64,000 bases of DNA, taken from positions 186,001 through 250,000 of IMG/VR virus record IMGVR_UViG_3300035212_003113; one strand, given 5' to 3'. Positions within the stretch are counted from its first letter, which is position 1. The number at the start of each line of letters is the position of its first letter. Shown piece by piece: positions 861-25,882 of the stretch. Below the pieces are notes generated by a model. It was not told the DNA's origin and did no database searches. It was given only the letters and a program-made list of their open reading frames with translations. Position numbers and translations under genes: made by a program.

Positions 861-866
861 TGTAAG
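861..866 (+). promoter_or_regulatory. Candidate leaderless-mRNA promoter element TGTAAG, 7 nt before ATG 874
   Basis: Same hexamer and spacing at 8905, 16839(-) and 25165; no SD. Confidence 0.55.
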
Positions 867-873
867 TCTTGGC

Positions 874-2112
874 ATGAACACACCAACCACAAAGCTAGTC
901 GAAAAAGACGGCAACTTTATAGTGTCAATTACTGTTCCAACCCGTGATGTCGAGGACGCACTAAATTCTGCCGCCTCGGCAATCATGCCTTCGGCCGAAG
1001 TGCCCGGGTTCCGCCCAGGGCACACGCCACTGCCAGTAATTCGTCAGCATTACTCTACGCAGCTAAAGACGCAGGTGTCGGCCAAGCTAGTGCAGGAGGC
1101 AACTCGCACTGCTCTAAAGCAGCTAAGCATCTCGGCCGGCGCCCGTCCTACGTTAGATGGCGACTGTCGTCCGCGCGGCATTCGCAAGTGGCTCGGCAAG
1201 TTCGATATCAATGGTTCATTTTCTTTTTCGGTTGTGACTCCGGTCCCACCAAGAGTAGAGGCGGTCTGTGTCGACGGACTCAACATCGACACTAATGCGG
1301 ACGACTCCTCTCGTGCCGTAGACGAGCAGCTGCACCACCTGCGTCATGACTTTGTCATCAAGACAGTTTCAGAACTGCCATCCGCCGACGGTGACGAGGT
1401 CGTTTGCTCGATTACCGCTACAGATAGCAACGGACAGGAGATCCCAGACTTACGCCTGACAAGCTTTCCACTTTCCATGGATTTGCAAGCCAGCAACATG
1501 CTTAGCAAGACAATGGCACAGCACCTTCTTGGCAAGCGCCCCGGAGATATCGCAGAATTCTCCGAAGACGGCACCACGTACCGCATGGCTGTGGAAAGCG
1601 TCAGCAACCAGCAGCTGCCCCCCCTTGATGACGAATTTGCGGTCAAGTGTGGTTTCACGTCGCTTGCAGATCTGCGCCAACAGGTACTTAATGAGTGGTT
1701 TCTGAAAAATGCCGGCAGGGTTCGACGAGCGCTACATCTGCAGGTTCGCGAGCAGCTTGTAAAGAACAATCCTTTTGAAGTTCCCTCGGAGTGGCTCGCA
1801 GATTACGACAACAAAGTCCGCGGTCTTGCTCAAAATGACGAAACACTCCAGGGAGCAGATGCAGCGGAGTTCGCAAGGGTTTACGCAGCATCAGACTACC
1901 TACTAGAGCTTCTAGAGGATCAGTTCCCGGCAGAGACTACAATTTCAGATGTAGATTTGATTCAGTACGCAAAAGAAGAGCTGGCAACTGCTGCCGTCAA
2001 GCCCGAAGACTATATCAAATTCCTAGTAAACAATGGCCAGTATGACTCGTGGGTAATTCAACAGAAAAAGACAAAGACCCTAGACTGGCTAATTTCGCGA
2101 TCAAATCAGTGA
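874..2112 (+). CDS. tig: Trigger factor (ribosome-associated chaperone/PPIase)
   Basis: Ribosome-binding signature VPGFRPGHTP (GFRxGxxP), FKBP-like middle (GDEV..., LLGKRPGD), LPPLDDEFA, C-terminal NPFEVP; ATG 874 preferred. Confidence 0.85.
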   Translation: MNTPTTKLVEKDGNFIVSITVPTRDVEDALNSAASAIMPSAEVPGFRPGHTPLPVIRQHYSTQLKTQVSAKLVQEATRTALKQLSISAGARPTLDGDCRPRGIRKWLGKFDINGSFSFSVVTPVPPRVEAVCVDGLNIDTNADDSSRAVDEQLHHLRHDFVIKTVSELPSADGDEVVCSITATDSNGQEIPDLRLTSFPLSMDLQASNMLSKTMAQHLLGKRPGDIAEFSEDGTTYRMAVESVSNQQLPPLDDEFAVKCGFTSLADLRQQVLNEWFLKNAGRVRRALHLQVREQLVKNNPFEVPSEWLADYDNKVRGLAQNDETLQGADAAEFARVYAASDYLLELLEDQFPAETTISDVDLIQYAKEELATAAVKPEDYIKFLVNNGQYDSWVIQQKKTKTLDWLISRSNQ

Positions 2113-2140
2113 GCCCCCAGTGGCAGAAAGAGAAAGAAAT

Positions 2141-2422
2141 ATGAACAAGAAGACCGTTACGTGCACCGTTAGTGGTTTCGCTGTCCGCAAGTACACGTCA
2201 GCCGAGGGCAAGAAAGAGGAAGATCCCGGCGTCGTATCCCTCGCGCTTATTGGCAACAAGGCCGATATCCGCCCAAATGAGGCCCTGGGTCAGCTGACCG
2301 TTTCGGATGTACTGGCCGCTCTTAACGTGCACCAGGAGTCGCGCGAGCAGGTAGAGATCACTCTGCACTTCTCAGTTCCAGAGGAGCTTGCCAACAAGAT
2401 CGAACAGGCCCGTCGAGGCTGA
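2141..2422 (+). CDS. Hypothetical protein
   Basis: Clean ORF with biased codons, followed by a terminator. Confidence 0.7.
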   Translation: MNKKTVTCTVSGFAVRKYTSAEGKKEEDPGVVSLALIGNKADIRPNEALGQLTVSDVLAALNVHQESREQVEITLHFSVPEELANKIEQARRG

Positions 2423-2429
2423 ACGAAAC

Positions 2430-2452
2430 GGGGCCCGCAAGGGCCCCTTTTT
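2430..2452 (+). terminator. Intrinsic terminator
   Basis: GGGGCCC-gcaa-GGGCCCC-TTTTT. Confidence 0.85.
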
Positions 2453-2458
2453 GCTTTT

Positions 2459-2770
2459 ATGAACAAGATTAAAGTAGCAAAAGCAACAACGTGTCCTAGG
2501 TGTAATTCTTTCATCTATTACCTGCCAACCCCGCTTGACGCCGGGTTAGCACAGCATCTTGCGATATTCGGGGAACCGTTTTATCCCCTTGATCGCTTCA
2601 AGGTGTTTAAAATAGAGACAGAGGGCATCTTAATCGATTCAATGATAGGTCGCGGCGAGATCCGAGTTAAGTTCAAGCAGAACGCGGTATCGATGTCTGC
2701 ACTTTTCCGGACAGCTCTTCTAGAGTGGGTACAAAGCAAAGTCGGAGCCGCCGAGTATATCGGCGCCTAG
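2459..2770 (+). CDS. Hypothetical protein with CxxC
   Basis: CPRC; fills the gap before dnaE. Confidence 0.6.
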   Translation: MNKIKVAKATTCPRCNSFIYYLPTPLDAGLAQHLAIFGEPFYPLDRFKVFKIETEGILIDSMIGRGEIRVKFKQNAVSMSALFRTALLEWVQSKVGAAEYIGA

Positions 2771-2779
2771 GTATTTAAA

Positions 2780-5700
2780 ATGAGCAAATTCGTAAACCTC
2801 CATGGCCACACATACGGTTCAGTTCTGGACGCGATCATTCGCCCTGCAGAGCTATTTAAGCGCGCCAAGGAGCTGGGCCACAAGGCAATTGCCATCACTG
2901 ATCACGGCAATATGTCGCAGATCTATCCCGCTTACAAAGAGTCAAAAAAGACCGGCGTAAAGCTTATTCCTGGCAATGAGGTTTACTTTGTCGAAGACCT
3001 AGATAATCCCAAGTCAAAGCGCCGGCATCTGGTGCTGCTCGCCGCCAACCATGAGGGGTACAAGAACTTGTGCCGCATTACATACGAGGGCTTCCTAAAT
3101 TCAGTTACCGTCATGGGTAAAGAGTTTCCTCGTATTACTGCGGACATACTTCGCAAGTACAACGCAGGTCTCTTTGCCACTTCTGCGTGCGGCGGCAGCA
3201 TCATTGCAGCACATCTGTATGAGGGCGACAACGATGGTGCTGATCGCCATGCAAAGATTTTTGCAGATATTTTCGGCGACCGCTTTTTCATAGAGATTCA
3301 GCCGCATACACTAAAGCGCGGCAATTTTGACCAGGTCCAGCTTAACAATATGCTCAAGGGCGTTGCAGAGCGCCTCGGCATTCGCATGGTTGCTACGTGC
3401 GATTCTCACTATCTAACTCCAGAGGACGAGAAGTTCCACGACATGGTTCTTGCTATCAGTGACAAGAAGTCGCTCTCTGATCTAACGCGTCATCGCTACG
3501 TGAGCAGCATTCCGTGTGGATCGTGCGCTGGCTCAGGCTGCGAGGAGTGCGGCAGCACTGGCATTGGAGAGATCATCCCATGCCCAGAGTTTTACCTGAA
3601 AACCGAAGATGAGGTCCGCGGCTTCTTCTCGAAGCAGTATTCCCCTGAGTTTGCCGAGCAGCTAATCTCGAACACCTCCATGATTGCCGACCAGTGCGAA
3701 GAGCCAAAGTATCTTGAGCCCAGCGGCGAGCGCATCCCGAAATATGATATGCGGATGATCACCTCCTGCAAAGACCACGACGAGTTTGTTGCCTGGCTGG
3801 CAGAGAAGCCTGCGCGACAGTCGATTCCAGTCGACAATGCATACCTGCGCTTTCGCGTGGCAAAGCGTTACCGCGATTACACTAAGGGCTTTGACCGAGT
3901 TAAGCAGAAGCAGTACTGGGAGCGCCTGGAAGCAGAGCTGGAGATTCTTGAGGCTCGAGGTTTTTGCAGCTATATGCTGATCGTAGCAGATGCCATCCAG
4001 TGGGCAGAGTCCGAGGAAATCTGGACAGGTATTGCTCGTGGATCGGCAGGCTCAAGCCTTATCGCATATTTTCTGGGCATTCACAAGCTGGATCCAATTC
4101 CTTATGGCCTGCTGTTCGAGCGCTTTCAGAATAAAGAGCGCGCTCAATGCCCAGATATCGATACCGATATTCTTTCATCTGGCCGTGATCGCCTGATTAA
4201 GTATATTTCTGAACGCTGGGGCCCAGAGTATGTTGCTCAGATCACTAACGTAAACCGCATCACTCCCAAGGTTGCTATCAAGGACATTGCCAAGTCCCTT
4301 GAAGTCGGCGGCACTCGCCAGGAGTCTTTTGCTATCGCTGAGAAGATCACAAAGGAAATCCCGCTCAAGGTTACAAAGCCCGATGGCAAAATTATCGAGA
4401 TTAATACGGTTGCTCTTGCAAAAGAGTACAGCCCAACTCTGGTAGATTTCTTCAAGCGGCACCCAGAGGTCGAGGCCCATGCAGAGAAGGTAGTCGGACT
4501 CCCCCGCAGCTGGGGCGTCCATGCCGGCGGCGTTATCGTCAGCGATGTCCCGCTACCCGAGTTCGTACCACTGCGCCGGGACTCAGATGGCACCGTCAGC
4601 GTGCACTATGACAAATACGTATCAGAGGAAGTCGGCCTAATCAAGATCGACATGCTTGGTCTCGATACCCTAGACGTCCTGCGCGAGGCGCATGCTGCCG
4701 CTCACAAGATGGGCATTGCGCTACCTAAACCTTGGGAAGTCCCAGAGGACGATCAGCGCGTCTACAAGATGATTTCTGATGGCGACGTTCTCGGTCTATT
4801 TCAGCTGGAAGGCGGAACGCTTGCACAGCTGTGCAAACCAATGCAGCCAAAGACTATAGAAGATATTTCTCTCATTAACGCACTCGGTCGACCTGGTGTT
4901 GACAAGGCCAAGCGCAAGCAATTTATTGAGCGCCGGCATGGTCGGCAGGAGGTCGAGTATGCTCACCCCGAGCTCGAGCACATCTCCAAGGCAACCCTTG
5001 GCATCTCTGTCTATGATGAAGATCTTCTAAAGATCGCGAACCACATCGCAGGCTGGAGTCTTTCTGAGGCTGACGGACTGCGCAAGCTAACAAAGCTAAA
5101 GGAAAAGGGCGCGGAGCTTGCGGCCAAGCTGGAGAAGAAGTTTGTGGATGATGCCGAAAAGCTCGGCCGTGTCACTCGTAAAGATGCTCAGTTCATCTGG
5201 GATAACGTTATTGCAGACTATGCAAAATACGGATTCTGCAAAGCACATTCTGTAGCTTATTCGCGAATGGGCTATGCAACTGCTTACTACAAGTATCACG
5301 CACGTGCCGCATTCCTGTGCGCCTACCTTAATCAGGAGATCTCTAAAAAGACGCCTGATACCGCTGCCTACATCGAGCAGATCAAGAAAGAGGTTCTTTC
5401 TAGCGGCATCTCTATCCGTGCCTGCGACATAAATCTGAGTGGAGACCGGTATCGCGCCATCAACAAGAAATCAATCGTTACAGGACTTAACGCCGTCAAC
5501 GGCGTTGGCGACGTAGCAATTGGGCATATCTTTGCCGGCCAGCCATATAACTCGCTTGCTGACTTCGTCTATCGTAGTCCTTCTTCTGTGAACCGCAAGA
5601 CCATTATCTCGCTCGCCAAGGCTGGCGCATTCGACGGCTTTAATATCTCGCGTCGCTGGATCTGCGAGGCTTTCTCTGAGGAGAAGCGCGCCAAGCAGCT

Positions 5701-6229
5701 GCGAACAAAGATCAACGCCCTTGGCGATGCCGCCACCAAAGACGGCAGCGATGCCCGCGATATTGATTGGTCTGGGTTTGACTATCTAGCTGATCAGAAT
5801 GCACTACGTGTAGAGTGGTCCCGCAAAGACATCCTACTCGGAGAAAAAGAAGCTCTTGGTGAATTTATCTCTGGCTCCGCAGAAGAGGTCTTTGGTGGTT
5901 TCTTCAAGAACATTGATAATCCTCTTACCAGGGCGAATATGATGGCTATGCCAAAATTCCATAAGGTAATTCTAGAAGGCATCGTACTTGGCATAGACCA
6001 GCTGCCAGTGCGCACTGGCAAGAATGCTGGTCGGATGCAAGGCAAGTTGCGCATAGAGTCACTTAAAAAAGAGGACTTTGAGGTGTCTATCTGGCCAGAC
6101 GACTGGGAGCTTGTAAAACCTCGCCTTGAGGTAGGACTGCCGGTAATAATGCGCTGTACTGTAAGAGAATGGAATGAATCTAAATCCCTTAACCTAGAAG
6201 ACATTGTCTCAATCTGGAAGGAAAAATGA
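2780..6229 (+). CDS. dnaE: DNA polymerase III alpha subunit (family C)
   Basis: PHP domain (LHGHT, TDHG, GNE, CDSH), RGSAGSSL, PDIDTD, HAGG, KIDMLGL, GFCKAHS, HhH, C-terminal OB fold. Confidence 0.97.
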   Translation: MSKFVNLHGHTYGSVLDAIIRPAELFKRAKELGHKAIAITDHGNMSQIYPAYKESKKTGVKLIPGNEVYFVEDLDNPKSKRRHLVLLAANHEGYKNLCRITYEGFLNSVTVMGKEFPRITADILRKYNAGLFATSACGGSIIAAHLYEGDNDGADRHAKIFADIFGDRFFIEIQPHTLKRGNFDQVQLNNMLKGVAERLGIRMVATCDSHYLTPEDEKFHDMVLAISDKKSLSDLTRHRYVSSIPCGSCAGSGCEECGSTGIGEIIPCPEFYLKTEDEVRGFFSKQYSPEFAEQLISNTSMIADQCEEPKYLEPSGERIPKYDMRMITSCKDHDEFVAWLAEKPARQSIPVDNAYLRFRVAKRYRDYTKGFDRVKQKQYWERLEAELEILEARGFCSYMLIVADAIQWAESEEIWTGIARGSAGSSLIAYFLGIHKLDPIPYGLLFERFQNKERAQCPDIDTDILSSGRDRLIKYISERWGPEYVAQITNVNRITPKVAIKDIAKSLEVGGTRQESFAIAEKITKEIPLKVTKPDGKIIEINTVALAKEYSPTLVDFFKRHPEVEAHAEKVVGLPRSWGVHAGGVIVSDVPLPEFVPLRRDSDGTVSVHYDKYVSEEVGLIKIDMLGLDTLDVLREAHAAAHKMGIALPKPWEVPEDDQRVYKMISDGDVLGLFQLEGGTLAQLCKPMQPKTIEDISLINALGRPGVDKAKRKQFIERRHGRQEVEYAHPELEHISKATLGISVYDEDLLKIANHIAGWSLSEADGLRKLTKLKEKGAELAAKLEKKFVDDAEKLGRVTRKDAQFIWDNVIADYAKYGFCKAHSVAYSRMGYATAYYKYHARAAFLCAYLNQEISKKTPDTAAYIEQIKKEVLSSGISIRACDINLSGDRYRAINKKSIVTGLNAVNGVGDVAIGHIFAGQPYNSLADFVYRSPSSVNRKTIISLAKAGAFDGFNISRRWICEAFSEEKRAKQLRTKINALGDAATKDGSDARDIDWSGFDYLADQNALRVEWSRKDILLGEKEALGEFISGSAEEVFGGFFKNIDNPLTRANMMAMPKFHKVILEGIVLGIDQLPVRTGKNAGRMQGKLRIESLKKEDFEVSIWPDDWELVKPRLEVGLPVIMRCTVREWNESKSLNLEDIVSIWKEK

Positions 6230-6771: not shown

Positions 6772-6774
6772 TAC

Positions 6775-7044
6775 ATGGAATGGAAAAAGCGCAACATAAG
6801 GAACGTGCATGTTTACTGCACAGATCTTGATGAGAAAAACTTAGAAGGCATGTTGGCAGAGTGCAAGATTGCAGATGCCCGCGGAATCATGTCCTGTGAT
6901 TTTGAAGGCAAAGTGATGCGCTTTTCTCCGGCCAAGAGTATGACATGGGGCGTTGTCTGGTATATTCAGAATCTTATGATTATGCAGCGATTGCACCAGG
7001 TTGATTCTGCTATAGAGATGCTTAAGAATCGCGGTGTGATTTGA
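6775..7044 (+). CDS. Hypothetical protein
   Basis: Tightly packed co-oriented ORF. Confidence 0.6.
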   Translation: MEWKKRNIRNVHVYCTDLDEKNLEGMLAECKIADARGIMSCDFEGKVMRFSPAKSMTWGVVWYIQNLMIMQRLHQVDSAIEMLKNRGVI

Positions 7045-7982: not shown

Positions 7983-7988
7983 ACTACG

Positions 7989-8871: not shown

Positions 8872-8893
8872 AGCCGGCGTCAGCCGGCTTTTT
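8872..8893 (+). terminator. Intrinsic terminator
   Basis: AGCCGGC-gtca-GCCGGCT-TTTT. Confidence 0.85.
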
Positions 8894-8904: not shown

Positions 8905-8910
8905 TGTAAT
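8905..8910 (+). promoter_or_regulatory. Candidate leaderless promoter element TGTAAT, 7 nt before ATG 8918
   Basis: Fixed spacing shared with three other genes. Confidence 0.55.
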
Positions 8911-8917: not shown

Positions 8918-9628
8918 ATGGAACACGTATTAAGAATAGAATCTCTCCTCAGGGCTAGCTCACTCTTTCATACAATGGAAGACGTCTCTACGCAAAACCA
9001 TTTAGTGATCACCTCGCTGTCCGGACATGCAGTCGGACTGTCATATGTAATCATGACAGATGAGATCGTGCTCGACTATGACCTAGTCCTGCAGCCCACT
9101 TATGTAAATCTATATACGCTTGGTAAACTCTGCGACCTTGCCACAAATCTTGGCGTTAGTGTGCAGTCGCCGCGACCAACAGAAATGCGTACTACAAAGG
9201 TTGGCTTACGCCGCCGAGTATCTCCGGTACTTCTGCAAACACTGCAGGATGTCGAGTCAGCGATAAATATATTCTGTTTTGCAGTCGATTCTGCATCTGA
9301 ATATTTTCAGCGCGTTGCTGTATCTCATACTCTTCCGAACGTCGACATCTCTATGTGGGAAGGCGTTGATCTGAATTTCACAAACATCGACAGACTTACC
9401 GAGCGCAAGGCGATAACATATACGGACTGGCGTGCCCTAGCAGAAACAGTTGCAGAGCTAGATATTCCTGATGAGTACATAGAAGGCATGGTGGATATTG
9501 CCAACCGCTGCCAGCTTTTCGAGGAAGCAAATCCGCACCTGCCTATTGCCCAAGTAGTTGATCCGCTGCTTGCACTGCTAGAAGAAATGGATGAGCGTCC
9601 GCCACCAAACAGCTATGATGTGAATTGA
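8918..9628 (+). CDS. Hypothetical protein
   Basis: 236-aa ORF at the head of the ruvC-dnaJ-recA operon. Confidence 0.7.
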   Translation: MEHVLRIESLLRASSLFHTMEDVSTQNHLVITSLSGHAVGLSYVIMTDEIVLDYDLVLQPTYVNLYTLGKLCDLATNLGVSVQSPRPTEMRTTKVGLRRRVSPVLLQTLQDVESAINIFCFAVDSASEYFQRVAVSHTLPNVDISMWEGVDLNFTNIDRLTERKAITYTDWRALAETVAELDIPDEYIEGMVDIANRCQLFEEANPHLPIAQVVDPLLALLEEMDERPPPNSYDVN

Positions 9629-15434: not shown

Positions 15435-15460
15435 AAACGGGGCCGCGAGGCCCCGTTTTT
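15435..15460. terminator. Bidirectional terminator between convergent genes
   Basis: AAACGGGGCC-gcga-GGCCCCGTTTTT. Confidence 0.9.
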
Positions 15461-16826
15461 ATTTAATCACGCCCGCCTTTGCGGCAGCAATCATCTCATG
15501 TCGTCTACCTGGATCTGCCCAGTCTGCTTGTGCAGACGACCCTAGTGATACCAGTGGATCATAGTAGCAAAAAACTTCACCGGGCTTTACGCTGGGCGCC
15601 GCATATACCGAGATGCCGCTGCTCCGGTCGTACGCCTCGAACGAGTGCGCATCGCGCTTGCCGCCCCCTCCAGGAGCGTCTACAACGAACACAGGCGTGT
15701 TGAAGCCGGCAGTACTGCCTCGCACCCCCTTCTCGATCTCAAGGGCCGTAGAAACCGCTGTACGCAAGTCCTCCGTGCCGCGCACCAAGTCGTGCACGTA
15801 TACATAATAAGGATGCACATTAATCCAGCTCAGCCGCTTTACCAGCATCTTCATAGTTTCTATGCTATCGTTCACGCCGCGCTGCAGTACGCTCTGGTTA
15901 CGGACAGTGACTCCGCGCTCCATCAGCAGATTGCACGCCCGTGCACTGATTCCTGTTATTTCCGCAGGATGATTAAAGTGCGTATGAATTACCACTTCCT
16001 TGTGCAGCTGGCGACCGCGAGCCGCAATATCGCAGATCGCATCAGTCCATGCTGTATCGGTCAGCACCTTCATTGGCTGGATTGCAAGCCCTTTTGTAGC
16101 GTAGCGCCACCGCCGTACATGCGGAATGGCCAGTAACCGCTCTCCAATAGCACGCACTTGATCGGCGCGCAGCCGGTAGCTGTCTCCGCCACTCACAACG
16201 ACATCCTCTACCTCGGGCCGCGATTCGATGTACTGGAAGATCCTCGACCAGCGCTCCTCGTCGGCCTTCAGACTGATCTTTTCTACCATATCTGTATCCA
16301 GGCCGACCGCATAACTGCGCGTACAAAAACGGCAATAGACCGGGCATGTATCAAGTGCTAGAAATAGTACTTTATCTGCATAGCGATGCGTCAACCCTGG
16401 CACCGGGCTGTCGTCCTGCTCGTGTAGCGAGTCCAGAGTCAACATGGGATGATCGGGCTCTAATTCACTGCCTACTGGCAGGAATTGCCGGCGAATTGGA
16501 TCAGTATACGGGCTTGACCAGTCGATCAGGCTCATTAGATACGGGCTTATGCGAACGGCCATGGGAGCAGCGGCAAATCCAGCTTGCACATCTGCAATGA
16601 AATCTTCTGACACAAGGTCGCGAACCGCGACTACTAGCCGGTCTGCTGAAGTTATCGCATTTTTTTCCTGCCAGGTGTGGCTTAGGAAAGCCCCCTCGTC
16701 GATCTCGCTCCACGCCGGAATCTTCCTCCAAAACTCGTCCGTGCGCAAGTTGCGGTGATCCAGGGCTGCGGCCGGAGCTGGCGGCTTAAGACTGTTAACG
16801 CTGTCAAGAATTTGTAGTTTGCTCAT
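15459..16826 (-). CDS. kamA: KamA-family radical SAM enzyme (lysine 2,3-aminomutase-like)
   Basis: DPIRRQ, GLTHRY, CPVYCRFCTR, SGGD, HFNHP, NQSVL, PYY, DAPGGGGK (PLP lysine); start moved to ATG 16826. Confidence 0.9.
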   Translation of the reverse strand: MSKLQILDSVNSLKPPAPAAALDHRNLRTDEFWRKIPAWSEIDEGAFLSHTWQEKNAITSADRLVVAVRDLVSEDFIADVQAGFAAAPMAVRISPYLMSLIDWSSPYTDPIRRQFLPVGSELEPDHPMLTLDSLHEQDDSPVPGLTHRYADKVLFLALDTCPVYCRFCTRSYAVGLDTDMVEKISLKADEERWSRIFQYIESRPEVEDVVVSGGDSYRLRADQVRAIGERLLAIPHVRRWRYATKGLAIQPMKVLTDTAWTDAICDIAARGRQLHKEVVIHTHFNHPAEITGISARACNLLMERGVTVRNQSVLQRGVNDSIETMKMLVKRLSWINVHPYYVYVHDLVRGTEDLRTAVSTALEIEKGVRGSTAGFNTPVFVVDAPGGGGKRDAHSFEAYDRSSGISVYAAPSVKPGEVFCYYDPLVSLGSSAQADWADPGRRHEMIAAAKAGVIK

Positions 16827-16833: not shown

Positions 16834-16839
16834 ATTACA
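16834..16839 (-). promoter_or_regulatory. Candidate leaderless promoter element TGTAAT, 7 nt before kamA ATG
   Basis: ATTACA on + strand; no SD. Confidence 0.55.
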
Positions 16840-16884
16840 AGATTGCCCATTCATGCGACCTTGAGGCTGGTAGTAGCGTGCAAC

Positions 16885-16910
16885 AAAAAACCCCGCTTTT
16901 TCAGCGGGGT
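16885..16910 (-). terminator. Intrinsic terminator after the adhesin gene
   Basis: ACCCCGCT/AGCGGGGT stem with T-tract on the minus strand. Confidence 0.8.
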
Positions 16911-19852: not shown

Positions 19853-19985
19853 ACCTGCCAGCCAAAATATGCCAGACCGCCGGCTATAAAATGTAATTCA
19901 ATACGAGATAGGTTAAGATTTTTATTAGCAGTCGAGGTGATTTATTTCTAAGTCAAGCAATTCCCAGTATCTTTATCGCGAGGTC

Positions 19986-20378
19986 GTGGTCGACCCTGTT
20001 ATCCTTTCTACCGTTTATCTCAAAAACGCAACGTATAACATCAACGAAGTTGAGCTGATGGAAGAACTCAAAGAACTTCAGGATCGGCTGATTGCCAAGA
20101 TCAAAGAGGTCATTGATACGTGCTTGACCGAGAGGCAGCGCGAGGTGATGATACGGACGTATTTAGAGCAAAGAACGCAGATGGAAGTGGCAGACATGCT
20201 AGGGGTATGTCAGACGACTGTACATAAGATTATCTCTGGCAATATCGACTATTCCAACGGAGGGAGACGTTACGGCGGAGCGCTAAAGAAGATAAAGAAG
20301 ATCTGCGAAACTGATCAAGAAGTGGTGCAGATTCTCTCTCGTCTCGAGGAGATCAAGGGACTTCTGAGCGAAACCTAG
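19986..20378 (+). CDS. Stand-alone sigma70 region-4-like HTH protein
   Basis: LTERQREVM..TYLEQRTQMEVADMLGVCQTTVHK; start uncertain. Confidence 0.7.
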   Translation: MVDPVILSTVYLKNATYNINEVELMEELKELQDRLIAKIKEVIDTCLTERQREVMIRTYLEQRTQMEVADMLGVCQTTVHKIISGNIDYSNGGRRYGGALKKIKKICETDQEVVQILSRLEEIKGLLSET

Positions 20379-20470
20379 CGCTTTCAGGTCTTCGTCTGGC
20401 CATTATTTCCTATTAAACATGAAACCACAGAGCCCGTGATCCGGTGAACGGTTGTTTGCAGACACCAACA

Positions 20471-20493
20471 AAAAGCCCGCTTTGCGGCGGGCC
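20471..20493 (-). terminator. Intrinsic terminator (paralog of 21302-21326)
   Basis: GCCCGC-cgcaaa-GCGGGC-TTTTT on the minus strand. Confidence 0.75.
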
Positions 20494-20497
20494 ATTT

Positions 20498-20623
20498 TCA
20501 TTCTTCTTCTACAGCAAGTCCTAGCAGTACGCCGTCAACCGCGTCTCCTTCACGCGCCAGTTCAGCTGCATAAAGCTTGTTCACTACCTTTACAGGACTA
20601 GAGAGTAAATCGGCCTTGCGAGC
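20498..20623 (-). pseudogene. Start-less diverged copy of the 3' end of gene 21331-21672
   Basis: ARKADLLSSPVKVVNKLYAAELAREGDAVDGVLLGLAVEEE* vs ARKADLLTSLVKVANELDAAGLANEADAVDSVLRGLAAVEE* (29/41 identical by hand); in-frame TAG at 20642-20644 with no start codon between. Confidence 0.8.
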
Positions 20624-20654
20624 ACTTGGGGTAAAAACAACCTAGCCCGGTTGC

Positions 20655-21218
20655 TTATTTTTTGATCGTACTGAGCTCTGAACCTGCATGCCCTACCTTA
20701 CCAACGTTTATAGAGAACTTGCCCTCGTTGGTTTCAACATCCAGCGTATCACCGCTTTTTGCCCAAATAAGAATTGACTCTCCATGCTTGGTCTGTTCTG
20801 CTCCTTTTGCAGATGTTACAGTTACTTGTCCATCAGCTGAGTTATGTGTTAGAAAGAGTGCCATATAATTTGGAAAATACTCTACAGTTACGCTAGCAGA
20901 TTTGGTGGTTTCATCTTCTATTGGGACTATAGAGACGCCCCAGCCATGAGCATTTAGAAGTTTTAGAAGAGAATCGATTGTCCGTACTCCGTCTAGTGCA
21001 CCTGCGATCTGCATGCCGGGTAAAGAATGTCGGGTTTGTCCTTCTCCACCTTGTAGTGATGCGCCACAATGGGGGCAAACTTTTTCTTTGGCACCTGCAT
21101 CTACTGCAATTTTTTTAAACCGATCTCCGATATCCATGGCTAGGCGAGCATTTCGGGCATCACCCTTCTGTAGGAATTTCTGCGCAAGGTCATACGCAGC
21201 AGCAGTCTTTTTAAGCAT
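20655..21218 (-). CDS. Hypothetical protein (CPHC knuckle), N-terminal LKKTA motif
   Basis: SD GAGG; 187-aa ORF. Confidence 0.7.
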   Translation of the reverse strand: MLKKTAAAYDLAQKFLQKGDARNARLAMDIGDRFKKIAVDAGAKEKVCPHCGASLQGGEGQTRHSLPGMQIAGALDGVRTIDSLLKLLNAHGWGVSIVPIEDETTKSASVTVEYFPNYMALFLTHNSADGQVTVTSAKGAEQTKHGESILIWAKSGDTLDVETNEGKFSINVGKVGHAGSELSTIKK

Positions 21219-21301
21219 AAGGAGCCTCTTTATTTGGGGCCCTTTGCCTGAGCCCGGTCAAACTTTCATATTTCTTATTTTCGGATTCATAGAAGCAACT
21301 G

Positions 21302-21326
21302 AAAAACCCGCTTCGCAGCGGGCTTT
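21302..21326 (-). terminator. Intrinsic terminator
   Basis: GCCCGC-tgcgaa-GCGGGT-TTTT on the minus strand. Confidence 0.75.
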
Positions 21327-21330
21327 CAAT

Positions 21331-21672
21331 TCACTCTTCTACCGCAGCCAGCCCACGCAGTACACTATCAACTGCGTCTGCTTCGTTGGCCAATCCAGCT
21401 GCATCGAGCTCGTTCGCGACCTTTACGAGGCTAGTGAGCAGGTCGGCTTTACGAGCATTTAGGGCAAACTGAATCTGGCCTAATAGTTCTCGCTCGGCCT
21501 TTGTCAACTTCTTGTCGCCCTCTGCGCGCGCCTGGAGCTCCTTCTTTTTCTTTTTTAGAAGTGCGGTTGGGATCTTCTTGTCCGCAGGCACCTTGAGCTT
21601 TTTATGCAGCTCGCCCTTTTCCTCAAGATTAACGGCTCCCTGCATCCACTTGTTTTTTTTCTTAGCAGCCAC
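21331..21672 (-). CDS. Small Lys-rich basic protein with C-terminal shared helical module
   Basis: KWMQGAV...GELHKKLKVPADKKIP; SD GAGGTG; possible DNA-condensing core protein (inference). Confidence 0.75.
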   Translation of the reverse strand: MAAKKKNKWMQGAVNLEEKGELHKKLKVPADKKIPTALLKKKKKELQARAEGDKKLTKAERELLGQIQFALNARKADLLTSLVKVANELDAAGLANEADAVDSVLRGLAAVEE

Positions 21673-21769
21673 TGCGCACCTCTATAAAATGATCTAGCGC
21701 ATTGCTTTGCAATATTTAGTAGAGGGGCTGAACTGGCAGCCCTTGCTATTATTGAAGCAGTAGGAGCCC

Positions 21770-22522
21770 ATGAGCAACAAATTCCCTTTGTTTAAGACTG
21801 CTGGATCGGGGCTAAAGGCTGAGGCTGGCCTATCGGAGATTGCAGACAGCGTACTAGATAAGATAAAAGATCTTAGCGACAGTGATGCAGTCAAGACAAT
21901 AAAACAGTTGCCAAAGGACATCTATAACAAGCTATTTGGCGATGATGCCGACGAGCCTGTCAGTGATGACAAGCAGGCTCCGGCTCCTCCAAAGACAAAA
22001 AAGTATTATCAGCAGGTGCTCTCGGAGAGCGAGAAGAAGACGCCGGGTGGAAAGCCTATAACTGTCACAAAGCTGCAGACCATTCCTGGTCCCCCTGGAT
22101 CAGATGATGCTTTTTATGCACGAGTACTAAGTGGCATCGGCGCTCCTGTAACACCCGAGACAAAAAAATTTCTATATGCATGGAGAAAGGCAGAGGGAGG
22201 GATGGCTGCATTTAATCCATTTAATACCACAAGATCACTATCCGGCGAGACACTGACGAATTATAATAGCCACGGCGTAAAAAACTACCCCAGCGAAGAC
22301 CACGGGGTAGCTGCAACAATTGCCACGCTTCTGGGTGGAAAGTACAGTTCTATAGTGGATGCCCTCAGGGACCAGTCTCCTGGTGCCGCTATGCGTGCGG
22401 CGCAGGCATTGGCAAAGACTCCCTGGGGCACTGGTCGCGGAGTTATAAACGTACTGCGCAGCAAGCAGATCACTCGCATGCCAATTTACTGGCTACCTGA
22501 AGAAGGCAGTGCGCTGACCTAG
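21770..22522 (+). CDS. Putative lysozyme-fold/lytic transglycosylase-like protein
   Basis: AWRKAEGG...FNPFNTT...NSHGVKNYPS...G.AAT..TL..G.Y; SD AGGAG. Confidence 0.55.
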   Translation: MSNKFPLFKTAGSGLKAEAGLSEIADSVLDKIKDLSDSDAVKTIKQLPKDIYNKLFGDDADEPVSDDKQAPAPPKTKKYYQQVLSESEKKTPGGKPITVTKLQTIPGPPGSDDAFYARVLSGIGAPVTPETKKFLYAWRKAEGGMAAFNPFNTTRSLSGETLTNYNSHGVKNYPSEDHGVAATIATLLGGKYSSIVDALRDQSPGAAMRAAQALAKTPWGTGRGVINVLRSKQITRMPIYWLPEEGSALT

Positions 22523-22572
22523 ACAGGCTATTCATATGATCGGTTAATTCCGATCTTTATATGTAAAATTAC

Positions 22573-22583
22573 CTATTAATCCG
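22573..22583 (+). promoter_or_regulatory. Candidate late promoter CTATTAATCCG
   Basis: Identical 11-mer at 49822; CTA(T/A)TAA recurs upstream of structural genes. Confidence 0.5.
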
Positions 22584-22630
22584 GGAGCTCTATTTTGGCC
22601 ATAGGTCTAAATTACCGGTATTGGAGTAAC

Positions 22631-23110
22631 ATGAAGCTGGACATTGATTGGAATTCAATTGAGCAGGCGGTTCGGCCCTCAAAGCCTGCCACGCTGGACT
22701 TCTCAGCTGTTGGCAGCCAGTTTACAAAGGTAGCGTTTGACGTGTACAAGCGCACTGGCGAGGATTCGCTGTGGGAGCTTCGCGAGGCCGAGGACGGCCG
22801 CAAGATCCTGGTCGCTCTATATGAGGAATCAGAGGGCGAGACCGTTAAGACCGCATCTGCCTCTGAGTGGTCGGCACATGCCGACGCGTCGCGTCAATTT
22901 GTTACGCTAGCTTTCCAGGGCACTCCGGTCTACAAGTTCTCGTCCAAGGAGCACGGCTTTGATGAGGGCAGCGCAGCGCAGTTTGCTAACTACGTAGTTG
23001 CGCAGGCAAAGCAGCCCGACTTTATCGCAAAGATGGCATTCAGCCTTACCCCGGCTCGCCGGGCACACCTGCTAGGCATCGTCCGCAATCAGGGGAAAAC
23101 AAATGAGTGA
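22631..23110 (+). CDS. Hypothetical head-cluster protein
   Basis: SD GGAG before ATG 22631; TKVA, VKTA motifs. Confidence 0.75.
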   Translation: MKLDIDWNSIEQAVRPSKPATLDFSAVGSQFTKVAFDVYKRTGEDSLWELREAEDGRKILVALYEESEGETVKTASASEWSAHADASRQFVTLAFQGTPVYKFSSKEHGFDEGSAAQFANYVVAQAKQPDFIAKMAFSLTPARRAHLLGIVRNQGKTNE

Positions 23111-24602
23111 TATTAAGCACCAGCTTGATGCTTTTATTAAGGCTGCCTCTGCAGCGATTGTCGAAGACTCCAAAGATTATTTTATATCGGATGTACTCGG
23201 CCGCATTGAGACTGCCTATGGTCGTACAAAAGATGCCAGCCTGCATGCGCTTCACAACATCGTGAAGTCGCACAAGGACAGCGTAATCATCAGCCGCGCC
23301 GAACTGCGCAGCGGTTGGGAGCGCGTTGCTAGCCTTGGGCGTGCAGATGTGGTTCGCGACGAGATCGGCGACCTCCTGGGTGCCGCTGCTCCGGACACTG
23401 GTGTTGTGCGCAGCTCGGAAAAGACCGCAATGAATGCAGGTGGCGCTGCCATTGATATCTCGGTTGACGAGTCTGCCAAGTACGCAGCGCTATTTGGTGA
23501 GCACGTCGCCACCCGCTCTATCCGCAGTGGTGCCGATGCAGTGTCTGCCGAAATTCGCGACTATGGTCTTGACGCCAAGCTTACGCTGGCTGCCCAGGAT
23601 TCGCGCTTTGCTGTATTCGCAGCAGAGCTAAGCGATGGCAAGCGCACCGCCAGTGCACTGATTCCTGTTGAAGTAAAAAACGGCAACGTCCTGCTCCCGT
23701 CGGTATTCTTCGGCTCCACCTTTTCTGAATTTAATGCAGACAATCTCAACAAGTGGGCATCCGCTGGTGGTGCCGCATCGGTATCTGCCGTAGGCCTTCT
23801 GGATCATTTGAATAATCTTGCTGGTCCAGCGCTGGTCGAGGCCGGCAAGGCAGAGTGGGACGCCGGGATTGGCATTGCTGGCGGTACAGGCGTTGACCTT
23901 GGCCAGGCCGCTTCGCCTGTCCTAGCTAACGCAGAAGTTCCGGCCGAGCTCACTGCGGCTGCCCGTGATCTGGGTGGCACTGATTTCGAGCAGATCTTTA
24001 AAGAGGCTACTGTCAAGTGCGGCCAGGAGAAGCTTGCATCTGCTCGCCAGATGCTCGCCAATGAGCTGCGCTTTGCAAACGTTCGCCATGATAAGATTGT
24101 AGTCGACAGCGAGCTGGAGAACGGCATTCGCCTTGGCACGCATGTCCGCACGGCTGCTGGCAAACAGTACATAACCGTCCCAGTAGAATTTGATGGCAAG
24201 AGCGTACTGCTCCCCGGCTTCTTCCAGGCCGGCAACCGCGTACTTGAATTCTCGGATCACGCTCTGCACTCTGTTGCAGCAGATGGCGAGACGTCATTCC
24301 GGTCAATTGCAAGCAGCATGCGCACTGCTTCATTCTCTGACCTCTACAAAGTAGTCATCAAGAATGCTCAGTTTGGCAACCTAGCTGGTGCCGAAGAGGC
24401 GATGGCAGTTATCCTAGAAGAACATGGTGAAGAGCTCCATCGTCAGGCATTCCAGGATATGATCTCTGTCATTCAGAAGAGCGCCACCATGGAGCGTAAC
24501 GATTTCGACAAGTACGCAGCAGACCTGGCCGACGGCGGCAGCGAGACGGCTAATTATGTCTCTAACAAGGTAAACCTGGCCATGTTTGGCCTTCTGGATT
24601 GA
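23103..24602 (+). CDS. Hypothetical head-cluster protein with internal duplication
   Basis: IPVEVKNGNVLLPSVF vs VPVEFDGKSVLLPGFF. Confidence 0.8.
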   Translation: MSDIKHQLDAFIKAASAAIVEDSKDYFISDVLGRIETAYGRTKDASLHALHNIVKSHKDSVIISRAELRSGWERVASLGRADVVRDEIGDLLGAAAPDTGVVRSSEKTAMNAGGAAIDISVDESAKYAALFGEHVATRSIRSGADAVSAEIRDYGLDAKLTLAAQDSRFAVFAAELSDGKRTASALIPVEVKNGNVLLPSVFFGSTFSEFNADNLNKWASAGGAASVSAVGLLDHLNNLAGPALVEAGKAEWDAGIGIAGGTGVDLGQAASPVLANAEVPAELTAAARDLGGTDFEQIFKEATVKCGQEKLASARQMLANELRFANVRHDKIVVDSELENGIRLGTHVRTAAGKQYITVPVEFDGKSVLLPGFFQAGNRVLEFSDHALHSVAADGETSFRSIASSMRTASFSDLYKVVIKNAQFGNLAGAEEAMAVILEEHGEELHRQAFQDMISVIQKSATMERNDFDKYAADLADGGSETANYVSNKVNLAMFGLLD

Positions 24603-24604
24603 TT

Positions 24605-25129
24605 ATGCTTAAAATCGCAAGTATAGAAAAAGAAATCACAGAACTAGATGGTGCTGGTAGCGACGAGAAAACTCGTGCTGCCGCAGCTCTTGATTTTGCA
24701 GCATACGATACGGATGATCTGCGTCGCGTAGCTGCACTTGTAGTGGGCTTTGCCGATGCATTTGACGCAGACGGCCACAAGACTGCTGCAGATGCACTTG
24801 ATCGCGTTCTGAATAAGTTCGCTGCCTCGCCAGAAGCATTCTGGGATCCGCCAAAGCGCCGTCCTATGGACCTGGTGCCGCCAGTACGCTCTTCCCTGGG
24901 GGACATTGGACACAGTCTCAGTACGAGACACTCGCCCGATCTTCCTGGTGTCCAGCTCGTACGCGTTTCAGATGGCGTATACCGCGATCCAGTAACCAAC
25001 AAGACATATGACTTTCATCGTGGCTTTGTGCTGGATGACGGCACAAAATACGTCGGAGGCTCTGTATCGGCCCAGACGCCGGCCGGAAACGAGAAGTTTA
25101 GGCCACTGAAGCAGCAAATAGACTACTGA
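24605..25129 (+). CDS. Hypothetical head-cluster protein carrying the shared helical module
   Basis: MLKIAS N-terminus; FADAFDADGHKTAADALDRVL. Confidence 0.75.
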   Translation: MLKIASIEKEITELDGAGSDEKTRAAAALDFAAYDTDDLRRVAALVVGFADAFDADGHKTAADALDRVLNKFAASPEAFWDPPKRRPMDLVPPVRSSLGDIGHSLSTRHSPDLPGVQLVRVSDGVYRDPVTNKTYDFHRGFVLDDGTKYVGGSVSAQTPAGNEKFRPLKQQIDY

Positions 25130-25164
25130 CTTCAGAGGGGCTCTTAAACGGGCCCCTAATTATT

Positions 25165-25170
25165 TGTAAT
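25165..25170 (+). promoter_or_regulatory. Candidate leaderless promoter element TGTAAT, 7 nt before ATG 25178
   Basis: Fixed spacing; no SD. Confidence 0.55.
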
Positions 25171-25177
25171 TAGCTTT

Positions 25178-25882
25178 ATGGCAACAAAAAACAAAGTACT
25201 GTCTCATATCGACCGAGATATAATTATCAAGATGCTTTCTGATGGCGAAAGTCCACAGAAAGTTGCCGAGTTTCTACAGACAAAGTATCCTGGGAAACAC
25301 AATGCACATCTAAATATTCATTGGCGAACAATCCACGACTTCCGTGATCGCTTCATGCCTTCTGGCAAACTAAGCAAAATTGCTATACAGGAGTCAGAGG
25401 TTCCGCGCTGGGCAAAAGAGAACGCGGATATAAAAGCCGAGCTAATGAAGAGCTCTGCGTACCAGAATGCAATAGCGAAGCTGGCCGAGGAAGAGATTAG
25501 CGTAAAAAAAGAATTGGTTCAGTTGCTTACTCTTGTCAAAGGCCGTATGGAGTTCTACTACAACGAGCTGGCAGTGAATAATAAGATGGATGAGCGCAAT
25601 GAGAAAGTGCTGCTAGAGCAGATGAAACTGCTGCTGTCCATACTCAGTCAACATGATAAAGCAGAGACGACGGCTGCTGCGGCTGCAACAGAAGTCAACG
25701 TTAGCATTAATATCGTAAAAGATCATGCACTTATAATAAGAGAAGCAGTGCGCGATACGCTAGACAGCGTAGACCCAAACCTCGCGATAGAGTTTATGGA
25801 GCGCCTTAATCTTAAAATGAAGGAGCTTGAGTATACGGAAACTACAGGTATTATTCCTATAGGCGGGAGAATAAATGTTTGA
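25178..25882 (+). CDS. Hypothetical protein, possible terminase small subunit
   Basis: N-terminal HTH-like segment, helical middle, VNVSINI strand; function is inference only. Confidence 0.4.
   Translation: MATKNKVLSHIDRDIIIKMLSDGESPQKVAEFLQTKYPGKHNAHLNIHWRTIHDFRDRFMPSGKLSKIAIQESEVPRWAKENADIKAELMKSSAYQNAIAKLAEEEISVKKELVQLLTLVKGRMEFYYNELAVNNKMDERNEKVLLEQMKLLLSILSQHDKAETTAAAAATEVNVSINIVKDHALIIREAVRDTLDSVDPNLAIEFMERLNLKMKELEYTETTGIIPIGGRINV

What the first reader, a model, noticed from the sequence alone, without database searches (positions are those of the whole stretch)
861..25180. TGTAAK-N7-ATG: a leaderless-mRNA promoter class
Seen: four genes without a Shine-Dalgarno have TGTAA(T/G) exactly 7 nt before the ATG. 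They are tig (861-866, ATG 874), 8918 (8905-8910), kamA (16839-16834 minus, ATG 16826) and 25178 (25165-25170), and each follows a terminator or hairpin. Established: a -10 element about 7 nt before an ATG is the signature of leaderless transcripts. Inference: TGTAAT lacks the conserved -11A of sigma70 TATAAT, so it may be read by a phage-encoded or alternative sigma factor. Leaderless initiation could keep these genes translated when host initiation is impaired.
Basis: partly seen in the sequence, partly recalled or inferred. Interest (0 to 1): 0.7.

Follow-up and report, generated by a model that had tools for sequence, protein, structure and literature searches.

The report
Conserved TGTAA promoter-like box, leaderless genes
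In an uncultured 372-kb lake phage, four operon-leading genes have no ribosome-binding site but carry a conserved TGTAA box exactly 8 bases before the ATG, and related phages show that this box behaves like a promoter -10 element, so these genes are most likely made as leaderless mRNAs, a known trick of some phages here using an unusual box.

Summary
All four TGTAAK-N7-ATG sites lie at the stated coordinates, lack a Shine-Dalgarno (SD) sequence and follow a GC-rich hairpin. The window belongs to a complete 371.7-kb jumbo phage from lake metagenomes.

Own-genome statistics alone are only suggestive: 6 start-linked TGTAA at that offset against 0.6 expected. The comparative evidence is strong. 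In relatives with 40-80% protein identity, all four orthologous sites keep TGTAA and the spacing, while the 7-nt spacer and the flanks drift.

At one site more distant relatives keep hairpin+TGTAAT but lie 19 nt from the ATG, and there an SD (GAGGT) appears. Another relative has TATAAT-N12 at that place. At the tig site one has CATAAT-N7.

Genome-wide, TGTAA is the top non-T-run 5-mer just after terminator-like hairpins (10 of 97 against 0.9 expected), mostly ahead of leadered, SD-bearing genes.

So TGTAAN behaves as a -10-type promoter box, and at N7 it should give leaderless mRNA.

The phage encodes its own sigma70-family factor (region 2, Zn ribbon, region 4) and a ribosomal protein bS21. 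Which sigma reads the box is unknown, and no RNA data were available.

This is a new variant of a known kind, as Thermus phages phiYS40 and Lalka27a already show.

The parts
810..836 (+). Terminator-like hairpin (11-bp stem, T tract) ending the upstream operon, 24 nt before the box of site 1
861..866 (+). TGTAAG box, site 1, 7 nt before ATG 874
   Evidence: Orthologs: G1/L023 TGTAAT, L022 TGTAAT, L025 TGTAAA, L024 CATAAT, all N7
874..2112 (+). Trigger-factor-like gene (412 aa), first gene of the tig to DnaE (Pol III alpha) to SSB-like operon; no SD
   Evidence: Pfam Trigger_N 2.8e-19. The N-terminus matches the SD-led orthologs in L021 and L026
8872..8889 (+). Intrinsic-terminator-like hairpin plus T tract, 15 nt before the box of site 2
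8905..8910 (+). TGTAAT box, site 2, 7 nt before ATG 8918
   Evidence: Orthologs have TGTAAC-N7-ATG in G1, G2, L022 and L024, with spacers tctgaaa, cctaggc, gctaggc and gttttat
8918..9628 (+). 236-aa gene of unknown function heading the RuvC-like, DnaJ-like, UvsX/RecA-like, primase operon; no SD
16890..16910 (-). Bidirectional terminator-like hairpin, 50 nt upstream of the box of site 3
16834..16839 (-). TGTAAT box, site 3, 7 nt before ATG 16826
   Evidence: TGTAAT-N7-ATG is kept in G1 and G2. The upstream in-frame ATG at 16850 is not conserved in G1 or G2
15459..16826 (-). Lysine-2,3-aminomutase-like gene (455 aa); no SD at the conserved start
   Evidence: Pfam LAM_C at its cut-off; start MSKLQI conserved
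25136..25157 (+). GC-rich hairpin (weak T tract), 7 nt before the box of site 4
   Evidence: A hairpin 6-8 nt before the hexamer is kept in G2, L029, L027, L028 and L035
25165..25170 (+). TGTAAT box, site 4, 7 nt before ATG 25178
   Evidence: G2 and L029 are the same. L028 and L035 have TGTAAT-N19-ATG with GAGGT. L027 has TATAAT-N12
25178..25882 (+). 234-aa gene of unknown function heading the operon that runs through a nucleotidyltransferase into the large terminase (30261-32150); no SD
19892..19897 (+). TGTAAT box of the same kind ahead of a leadered gene: about 90 nt before the sigma-region-4-like HTH gene 19986-20378. The motif (C/T)ATAAAATGTAAT is conserved in G1 and G2
22562..22567 (+). 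TGTAAA box 6 nt after a small hairpin, ahead of a leadered gene (GGAG SD, ATG 22631). TGTAAA is kept in L029

Best explanation
TGTAAN is a -10-type promoter box of this jumbo-phage clade, without any conserved -35. It is usually placed just behind the terminator-like hairpin of the preceding operon.

At four operon heads (tig-DnaE, the RuvC/UvsX/primase operon, the kamA-like gene, and the operon leading to the terminase) the box ends exactly 7 nt before the ATG and there is no SD. RNA polymerase should therefore start at or next to the A of the ATG, giving a leaderless mRNA whose 5'-terminal AUG is bound directly by the ribosome.

What is shown: the motif, its spacing, its conservation, the absence of an SD, the hairpin association, and the link between box-to-ATG distance and SD presence across relatives.

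What is inferred: promoter function, the transcription start site (TSS) at +1 of the ATG, and the reading factor. The kept G at position 2 and the free last base do not fit the sigma70 TANNNT rule. A phage factor is therefore a reasonable but untested reader: the phage's own sigma, or a modifier of host RNA polymerase.
For: 1. Sixteen orthologous sites in 4 groups keep T-13 G-12 T-11 A-10 A-9 (15-16 of 16). The N7 spacer has within-group identity of only 0.29-0.39 in three groups, and the upstream flanks 0.43-0.68.
2. At site 4 the hexamer stays 6-8 nt after the hairpin while its distance to the ATG changes. At N7 there is no SD (window, G2, L029). At N19 there is GAGGT (L028, L035). L027 has TATAAT-N12.
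3. The tig ortholog in L024 has CATAAT-N7-ATG. Distant tig orthologs (37-38% identity) have hairpin + GGAG + start and no box.
4. TGTAA lies within 22 nt after 10 of 97 terminator-like hairpins against 0.87 expected (p 3e-8). It ranks first among 30 same-composition permutations. There are none at control offsets -80, -60, +66 and +88.
5. These other sites precede leadered genes with an SD 13-90 nt downstream, and several are conserved in G1, G2 and L029.
6. All sites use ATG. The base at -1 is a pyrimidine in 14 of 16, so Y-1/R+1 fits a TSS.
7. The first 40 nt of these coding sequences are G-poor and weakly folded: in the top third of the SD-led gene distribution for 15 of 16 sites, and for the window's four genes a mean of -2.1 against -5.0 kcal/mol in 126 SD-led genes, with p 0.02 for folding and 0.007 for G content.
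8. A TA-like box about 12 bp before the start codon is the accepted in-silico signature of leaderless genes (PMC3160421).
9. Phage precedents exist: phiYS40 and Lalka27a.
Against: - There are no transcript data: no RNA run was listed. The TSS is therefore inferred.
- Hairpins in this clade are sometimes followed at once by SD + start with no room for a promoter (L021, L026, L034, L036; relatives of window gene 2459). Read-through transcripts therefore exist and could also carry these ATGs on leadered RNA.
- The intergenic sense/antisense bias of TGTAA is only 59 to 37.
- The class is small, and own-genome statistics alone do not survive multiple testing.
- The box lies one base further from the ATG (-13 to -8) than the commonest -10 register.
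- The host is unknown, so its capacity for leaderless translation is unknown.
Confidence: 0.6

Rival explanations
1. RNA-level signal. UGUAA, 8 nt before the AUG, acts on read-through (leadered) transcripts as an SD substitute or as the operator of a translational regulator, in the manner of T4 RegA. It would be bound by a phage or host protein (S1, the phage bS21-modified ribosome, or an RNA-binding repressor).
For: The box sits where an SD would sit. Several hairpins in the clade are followed directly by SD + start, so read-through mRNAs exist. The phage encodes a bS21 homolog that could alter initiation. The regulated genes are replication and packaging operon heads, as with RegA targets (from knowledge, not tested).
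Against: The same box occurs 13-90 nt from start codons that have their own SD. In L028 and L035 it stays next to the hairpin, not next to the ATG. Orthologous positions hold TATAAT or CATAAT, which are DNA -10 variants. I could see no complementarity of UGUAA to the 16S rRNA 3' end (from memory of that sequence, not tested).
Confidence: 0.13
2. Hairpin-linked RNA processing or termination signal. Hairpin plus UGUAA marks a cleavage or 3'-end/5'-end formation site, so short-leader or leaderless 5' ends arise by processing rather than by initiation.
For: There is a strong association of TGTAA with the 22 nt after hairpins, and the hairpin-to-box distance is conserved within each site.
Against: The hairpin-to-box distance differs widely between sites (4 to 50 nt), whereas the box-to-ATG distance is exact in the SD-less class. 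Nothing explains the link between N7 and the absence of an SD, or the TATAAT/CATAAT substitutions.
Confidence: 0.08
3. It is a promoter, but an ordinary host-sigma one. TGTAAN would be a deliberately weak or activator-dependent -10 read by the host primary sigma (middle-promoter logic, as with T4 MotA/AsiA), with no dedicated phage sigma. This rivals only the 'alternative sigma' part of the claim, so its confidence overlaps with that of the best explanation.
For: TATAAT and CATAAT occupy orthologous positions. A conserved small region-4-like HTH protein (window 19986-20378) lies in the same module in the relatives. The operon that carries the phage sigma gene is itself headed by hairpin+TGTAAT, which suits a box read before that sigma exists.
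Against: G at position 2 is kept in 15 of 16 sites and the last base is free, the opposite of the -11A/-7T rule. There is no conserved -35 or TGn extension.
Confidence: 0.25
4. Chance similarity with no function.
For: Own-genome positional enrichment does not survive correction for all k-mers and offsets.
Against: The box and its spacing are conserved at all four orthologous sites across lineages whose spacers have randomised, and there is hairpin-linked enrichment.
Confidence: 0.02

Closest known systems
Leaderless ('TA-led') bacterial genes: a -10 box TANNNT about 12 bp before the start codon (Actinobacteria, Deinococcus-Thermus; PMC3160421, PMC4633059)
   Same: A -10-like box at a fixed short distance before the ATG, no SD, an AUG start, and an unstructured 5' coding end.
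   Different: The box is TGTAA(N). It has G where the invariant A stands and a free last base where the invariant T stands, and its register is one base further upstream (-13 to -8). There are only 4-6 genes per genome, in a genome otherwise rich in strong SDs.
Thermus phages phiYS40 and Lalka27a: middle/late transcripts mostly leaderless, with a non-canonical late -10 (TAGGGT) in Lalka27a (PMC3594737; bioRxiv 10.64898/2026.04.20.719267)
   Same: Phage promoter classes whose TSS is the first base of the start codon, and a non-consensus -10 that suggests phage-modified RNA polymerase specificity.
   Different: Those are experimentally mapped, affect most transcripts, and come from a host phylum where leaderless mRNAs are common. 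Here the class is a small subset, the host is unknown and there are no RNA data.
Phage T4 late promoters (TATAAATA at about -13 to -6, no -35, read by gp55/gp33 with the sliding clamp; from knowledge)
   Same: A -10-only box in the same register (TATAAA against TGTAAN at -13 to -8), no -35, and a phage-coded sigma-like reader.
   Different: T4 late mRNAs are leadered with SDs. No gp55, gp33 or clamp link was tested here. The phage's sigma has both region 2 and region 4.
Lambda cI mRNA from PRM (the classic leaderless phage mRNA; from knowledge)
   Same: A transcript beginning at the A of the AUG in a phage of an SD-using host.
   Different: That is a single regulatory gene with a canonical sigma70 promoter. 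Here several operon heads share a non-canonical box.
Jumbo phages with mapped TSSs: AR9 (PMC5312081) and phiKZ (PMC8244752)
   Same: Large phages with distinct promoter classes for temporal control.
   Different: Both use their own multisubunit RNA polymerases and showed no leaderless transcripts (AR9 UTRs are 26-491 nt; phiKZ has none leaderless). This phage shows no Rpb2-type polymerase subunit and carries a sigma factor instead.

Membership tests
Leaderless (TA-led) genes | A -10-like promoter box about 10-12 bp upstream of the start codon | tested here: met
   TGTAAN at -13 to -8 in 4 window sites and 12 orthologous sites. The criterion is from PMC3160421
Leaderless (TA-led) genes | No Shine-Dalgarno sequence between the box and the start codon | tested here: met
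   There is no SD core in the N7 spacer of any of the 16 sites, whereas most genes of the genome have a match of 4-8 nt to the anti-SD (308 of 382 called genes)
Leaderless (TA-led) genes | Transcription start coincides with the first base of the start codon | not testable with these tools
   No RNA run was listed for this DNA. The DNA runs are lake and river metagenomes only
Leaderless (TA-led) genes | AUG start codon (leaderless initiation depends on a 5'-terminal AUG) | tested here: met
   ATG at 16 of 16 sites. SD-led orthologs in L026 and L034 use GTG
Canonical sigma70 -10 hexamer (TATAAT / TANNNT) | A at position 2 (-11A) | tested here: not met
   G in 15 of 16 orthologous sites and A in 1
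Canonical sigma70 -10 hexamer (TATAAT / TANNNT) | T at position 6 (-7T) | tested here: not met
   T 10, C 4, A 1, G 1 of 16
Canonical sigma70 promoter | A -35 hexamer TTGACA-like 16-18 bp upstream, or a TGn extension | tested here: not met
   The consensus scan calls no promoter at the sites. Information content is 0.75 bit or less at -22 to -14. TGn is present only at site 2
Intrinsic terminators (the hairpins upstream) | A GC-rich stem-loop followed by a T tract | tested here: met
   Sites 1-3 are called by the scan. Site 4 has the stem but only a weak T tract
Sigma70-family sigma factor (262-aa ORF, G000 177957-178745, outside the window) | Region 2 and region 4 domains | tested here: met
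   Own r2 scores 19.9-22 bits, below the cut-off. However, 38 of 41 family members hit Sigma70_r2 (best 7e-13), and the family profile hits PDB sigma factors over r2 and r4 (best 2e-9). Four invariant Cys lie between the two regions
Sigma70-family sigma factor (262-aa ORF) | Binds core RNA polymerase and directs it to the TGTAAN box | not testable with these tools
   There is no functional data. Attribution of the box to this sigma is inference only
T4-type late promoter system | A gp55-like factor plus gp33 and a clamp coactivator | not tested
   Only the motif register resembles it (from memory). No search for gp55 or gp33 homologs was run

The most novel reading that the evidence does not exclude
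A jumbo-phage clade uses a -10-only box (TGTAA) that breaks both base-flipping rules of sigma70 recognition (-11A, -7T). The clade places this box so that the heads of its replication and packaging operons are leaderless. Together with a phage-encoded bS21, this would form a separate SD-independent expression channel alongside about 75 promoters of a second, bipartite class.
Probability: 0.2. Interest if true: 0.65.

Novelty: new variant of a known kind. Interest (0 to 1): 0.45.

Why it matters
Promoters and translation signals of uncultured huge phages are almost unknown. The only two jumbo phages found in the literature search to have mapped start sites, AR9 and phiKZ, showed no leaderless mRNAs.

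A conserved, non-canonical -10 box that yields leaderless operon heads would have three uses:
- It gives a sequence handle for annotating gene starts that gene callers currently extend upstream. The tig gene is called at 419-442 aa instead of 412-413 in public collections.
- It helps to define temporal gene classes in this clade.
- It offers a testable pairing between a phage sigma factor and a promoter that lacks the -11A/-7T determinants.

If the box turns out to be read by ordinary host polymerase, it remains a useful annotation rule but is biologically ordinary.

Tried and rejected
- RNA evidence: the search for RNA runs listed none. 'None was listed' does not mean none exists.
- Population variation: laying four DNA runs on window 600-1300 gave only identical contigs, so nothing could be learned about variation at site 1.
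- More relatives: IMG/VR scans with tig and the 8918 protein gave only two relatives, G001 and G002. The one metagenome scan gave one contig, near-identical to G001 at the sites examined. The 81%-identity tig lineage had no retrievable DNA.
- Canonical promoters: the sigma70 consensus scan finds no more sites than shuffles do, and none at the four sites.
- Alternative registers:
  - TGn + AATNNN as an extended -10 puts the TSS inside the ATG and keeps the final T in only 9 of 15 sites. Rejected.
  - TAANNN as the hexamer has no conserved last T. Rejected.
  - TGTAAC as an ECF-type -35 (it resembles B. subtilis sigX/sigW -35 boxes, from memory) has no conserved -10 16-17 nt downstream and would start transcription inside the genes. 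Rejected.
- A site-1-specific TGTCYG 17 nt upstream is shared by 4 tig orthologs but by no other site, so it is not a class feature.
- One-mismatch variants of TGTAA at offsets 7-9 add no convincing members.
- Phage polymerase and factors: no Rpb2_6 match. The T7-type RNA polymerase search is uninformative because its control rang nowhere. There is no IF3_C or IF-2.
- Host: the closest cultured phages have only 25% terminase identity. The kamA-like gene has a 74% homolog on a 6-kb contig of a 'Deltaproteobacteria' MAG, without the box. This is too weak to name a host.
- The phage sigma alone finds no PDB sequence match. The family profile was needed.
Full report
**The observation.** The four sites are exactly as described:
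- TGTAAG 861-866 before ATG 874, the trigger-factor-like gene.
- TGTAAT 8905-8910 before ATG 8918.
- TGTAAT 16839-16834 on the minus strand before ATG 16826, the lysine-2,3-aminomutase-like gene.
- TGTAAT 25165-25170 before ATG 25178.

No spacer holds a Shine-Dalgarno (SD) core. Each site follows a GC-rich hairpin: 810-836, 8872-8889, 16910-16890 and 25136-25157. The first three have a T tract and are called terminator-like by the consensus scan.

**The genome.** The window is bases 186001-250000 of one 371,675-bp contig.
- The contig has a 127-bp end overlap, is 51% G+C, and is an IMG/VR virus record rated complete.
- Genes are almost all on the + strand.
- It encodes DnaE-type Pol III alpha, a gpA-type large terminase, an SSB-like protein, RuvC-like, UvsX/RecA-like and primase proteins, and a nucleotidyltransferase.
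- It is therefore an uncultured jumbo phage. The DNA occurs in lake and river metagenomes.
- The nearest cultured phages share only 25% terminase identity, so the host is unknown.
- Most genes have a clear SD: 308 of 382 called genes have a match of 4-8 nt to the anti-SD.

**Own-genome statistics.**
- TGTAAK occurs 164 times on both strands. Spacer 7 to an ATG that opens an ORF of at least 100 aa occurs 5 times, against 0-3 for every other spacer from 0 to 40.
- Over all candidate starts, TGTAA at offset 8 occurs 6 times against 0.61 expected (p 4e-5). This is the strongest position-specific signal that is neither SD nor the ATGAAGCT paralog family, but alone it would not survive correction for about 26,000 tests.
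- Further candidates are G000 319736 (TGTAAA-N7-ATG, 491 aa), G000 137007 (hairpin, TGTAAC-N6-ATGATG, a thymidylate-kinase-like N-terminus) and G000 77052 (TATAAA-N8-ATG).

**Conservation in relatives.** This is the decisive evidence. I found relatives through IMG/VR, one metagenome scan and protein look-ups.
- tig site, relatives at 51-59% protein identity: TGTAAT or TGTAAA at N7 in G001/L023, L022 and L025, and CATAAT at N7 in L024.
- Site 2, relatives at 40% identity: TGTAAC-N7-ATG in G001, G002, L022 and L024, with spacers tctgaaa, cctaggc, gctaggc and gttttat.
- kamA site: kept in G001 and G002.
- Site 4: kept in G002 and L029.
- In a logo of the 16 sites, T-13 G-12 T-11 A-10 A-9 are present in 15-16 of 16. 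Position -8 is T10/C4/A1/G1. The N7 positions carry 0.02-0.82 bit.
- Within orthologous groups, N7 identity is 0.29-0.39 for three groups, close to random, against 0.84-1.00 for TGTAA.

**Promoter element or translation signal?** Four lines favour a promoter -10 box.
1. The site-4 series. The window, G002 and L029 have hairpin, 7-8 nt, TGTAAT, N7, ATG and no SD. L028 and L035 (46-48% identity) keep hairpin, 7 nt and TGTAAT, but the ATG is 19 nt further on and the spacer contains GAGGT. L027 has hairpin, 6 nt, TATAAT-N12-ATG. L034 and L036 have hairpin followed by AGGAG or AGGA and a start, with no box. The hexamer thus stays with the hairpin, not with the ATG, and an SD appears whenever there is room for a leader.
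2. Distant tig orthologs (37-38% identity, L021 and L026) have hairpin + GGAG + ATG or GTG and no box.
3. TGTAA is the most enriched 5-mer, apart from T runs, in the 22 nt after terminator-like hairpins on the coding strand: 10 of 97 against 0.87 expected (p 3e-8), with none at offsets -80, -60, +66 and +88. It ranks first of the 30 permutations of its own letters; the next has 6.
4. These further sites precede genes with leaders of about 13-90 nt that carry SDs: G000 26741, 134495, 175881, 205892 (window 19892), 208562 (window 22562) and 284161. Several are conserved in G001, G002 and L029.

The intergenic sense/antisense bias of TGTAA is only modest, 59 to 37.

**Features expected of leaderless mRNAs.**
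- All 16 sites use ATG, whereas the SD-led orthologs in L026 and L034 use GTG.
- The base at -1 is a pyrimidine in 14 of 16 sites and C in 11, against 59% pyrimidine in 126 SD-led genes. This fits a Y-1/R+1 start.
- The first 40 nt of the coding sequences are G-poor and weakly folded. The mean over all 16 sites is about -1.7 kcal/mol. For the window's four genes it is -2.1 against -5.0 kcal/mol in SD-led genes (p 0.02), with lower G content (p 0.007).
- These features also fit SD-independent initiation in general.

**Which polymerase reads the box?**
- No Rpb2-type subunit was found. The T7-type search was uninformative.
- The phage has a 262-aa ORF at G000 177957-178745 whose family is clearly sigma70-like. 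Thirty-eight of 41 relatives hit Sigma70_r2. The family profile matches solved sigma factors over regions 2 and 4. Four invariant cysteines lie between these regions, suggesting a Zn ribbon in place of region 3.
- Two small region-4-like HTH proteins also exist (window 19986-20378; G000 22.5-23.1 kb).
- The kept G at position 2 and the free last base contradict the sigma70 -11A/-7T rule, and there is no conserved -35.
- The sigma gene's own operon is headed by hairpin + TGTAAT. This fits autoregulation, or a box read before that sigma exists.
- Attribution of the box to any factor is therefore inference.

**Rival readings.**
- An RNA-level operator or SD substitute. This is weakened by the leadered boxes and by the TATAAT and CATAAT substitutions.
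- A hairpin-linked processing signal. This is weakened by the variable hairpin-to-box distance between sites (4-50 nt).
- An ordinary host-sigma promoter that needs an activator. This is a rival only to the sigma claim.
- A caveat applies to all readings. Hairpins in this clade are sometimes followed at once by SD + start, so read-through transcripts exist.

**Comparison with what is known.**
- A TA-like box about 12 bp before the start codon is the accepted in-silico mark of leaderless genes (PMC3160421).
- Thermus phage phiYS40 makes most middle and late mRNAs leaderless (PMC3594737).
- Lalka27a does the same, with a non-canonical late -10, TAGGGT (bioRxiv 10.64898/2026.04.20.719267).
- The jumbo phages AR9 and phiKZ showed no leaderless transcripts.
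- Huge phages encoding sigma70 and S21 have been reported (PMC7162821).
- This finding is therefore a new variant of a known kind: a new box, in a new phage clade, affecting a small subset of operon heads.

**Limits.**
- No RNA run was listed, and laying DNA runs showed no variation.
- Gene calls are my own simple ORF model.
- The 16 sites are 4 orthologous groups, not 16 independent events.

Noticed in passing
G000 2944-123237 and 350795-371437 (outside the window; none inside it): About 75 copies, all on the + strand, of a rigid bipartite motif: (G)GYCCTAAA, then 13 nt, then GATCC(T)TG. The middle comes in two sub-families, GC-rich 'GCCGGnGnCCCCC' and 'AACATTCTTTTT'. Most copies lie 20-45 nt before an SD and a small gene. 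This is probably the phage's main (early?) promoter class or a repeated regulatory element. It occupies the part of the genome that largely lacks hairpin+TGTAA sites.
   Followed up: partly
G000 177957-178745 (L001 1351-2139): A phage-encoded sigma70-family factor of 262 aa with region 2, four invariant Cys (a putative Zn ribbon) and region 4. It has more than 100 metagenomic relatives of similar length. Its operon starts with hairpin + TGTAAT at G000 175881.
   Followed up: partly
G000 170554-170712 (L037): A phage-encoded ribosomal protein bS21 homolog (43 bits, over the Pfam cut-off). No IF3 or IF2 was found.
   Followed up: no
window 2430-2461: The terminator-like hairpin 2430-2447 is followed after 11 nt by ATG 2459 (a 103-aa gene before DnaE), with neither an SD nor a TGTAA box. 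Relatives L022, L023 and L024 have GGAG there and a longer N-terminus. How this gene is translated in the window's phage is unexplained.
   Followed up: partly
window 19986-20378; L027 2929-3363; L028 3587-3922; L035 42-362: A small sigma-region-4-like HTH protein is conserved a few kb upstream of site 4 in all relatives. In the window it is preceded by the conserved TATAAAATGTAAT.
   Followed up: partly
window 22568-22630 and orthologs in L029, L027, L028: A conserved leader (about 65 nt, motif CTATYAATCYG...CTCTA) lies between the TGTAAA box and the gene starting at 22631. It is conserved even where the box is not, so it may be an RNA element or a regulator site.
   Followed up: no
G000 27862, 28812, 32256, 47327-47945, 51343, 62214, 337109-339523 and others: Many small genes begin ATGAAGCT(A/G) (MKL...). 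This looks like a large paralog family in the early-type regions, several members without an SD.
   Followed up: no
L021 11893-15753; L022 12029-16219; L024 11939-16011; L029 15149-18079: In relatives, DnaE carries intein hits or is split into two ORFs (915/916 + 372/378 aa), and the large terminase of the 173-kb contig holds an intein with a LAGLIDADG domain. The window's copies are uninterrupted.
   Followed up: no
L038 (JAYTVG010000331.1, a 'Deltaproteobacteria' MAG contig of 6 kb): It holds a 74%-identical homolog of the kamA-like gene with a different N-terminus and no TGTAA box. It is either a mis-binned phage fragment or a weak hint to the host lineage.
   Followed up: partly
window 853-873: Public gene calls extend tig upstream to GTG 853 (419 aa), or further in relatives (436-442 aa), apparently because no SD marks the true ATG. 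Gene callers are likely to mis-start this class.
   Followed up: partly
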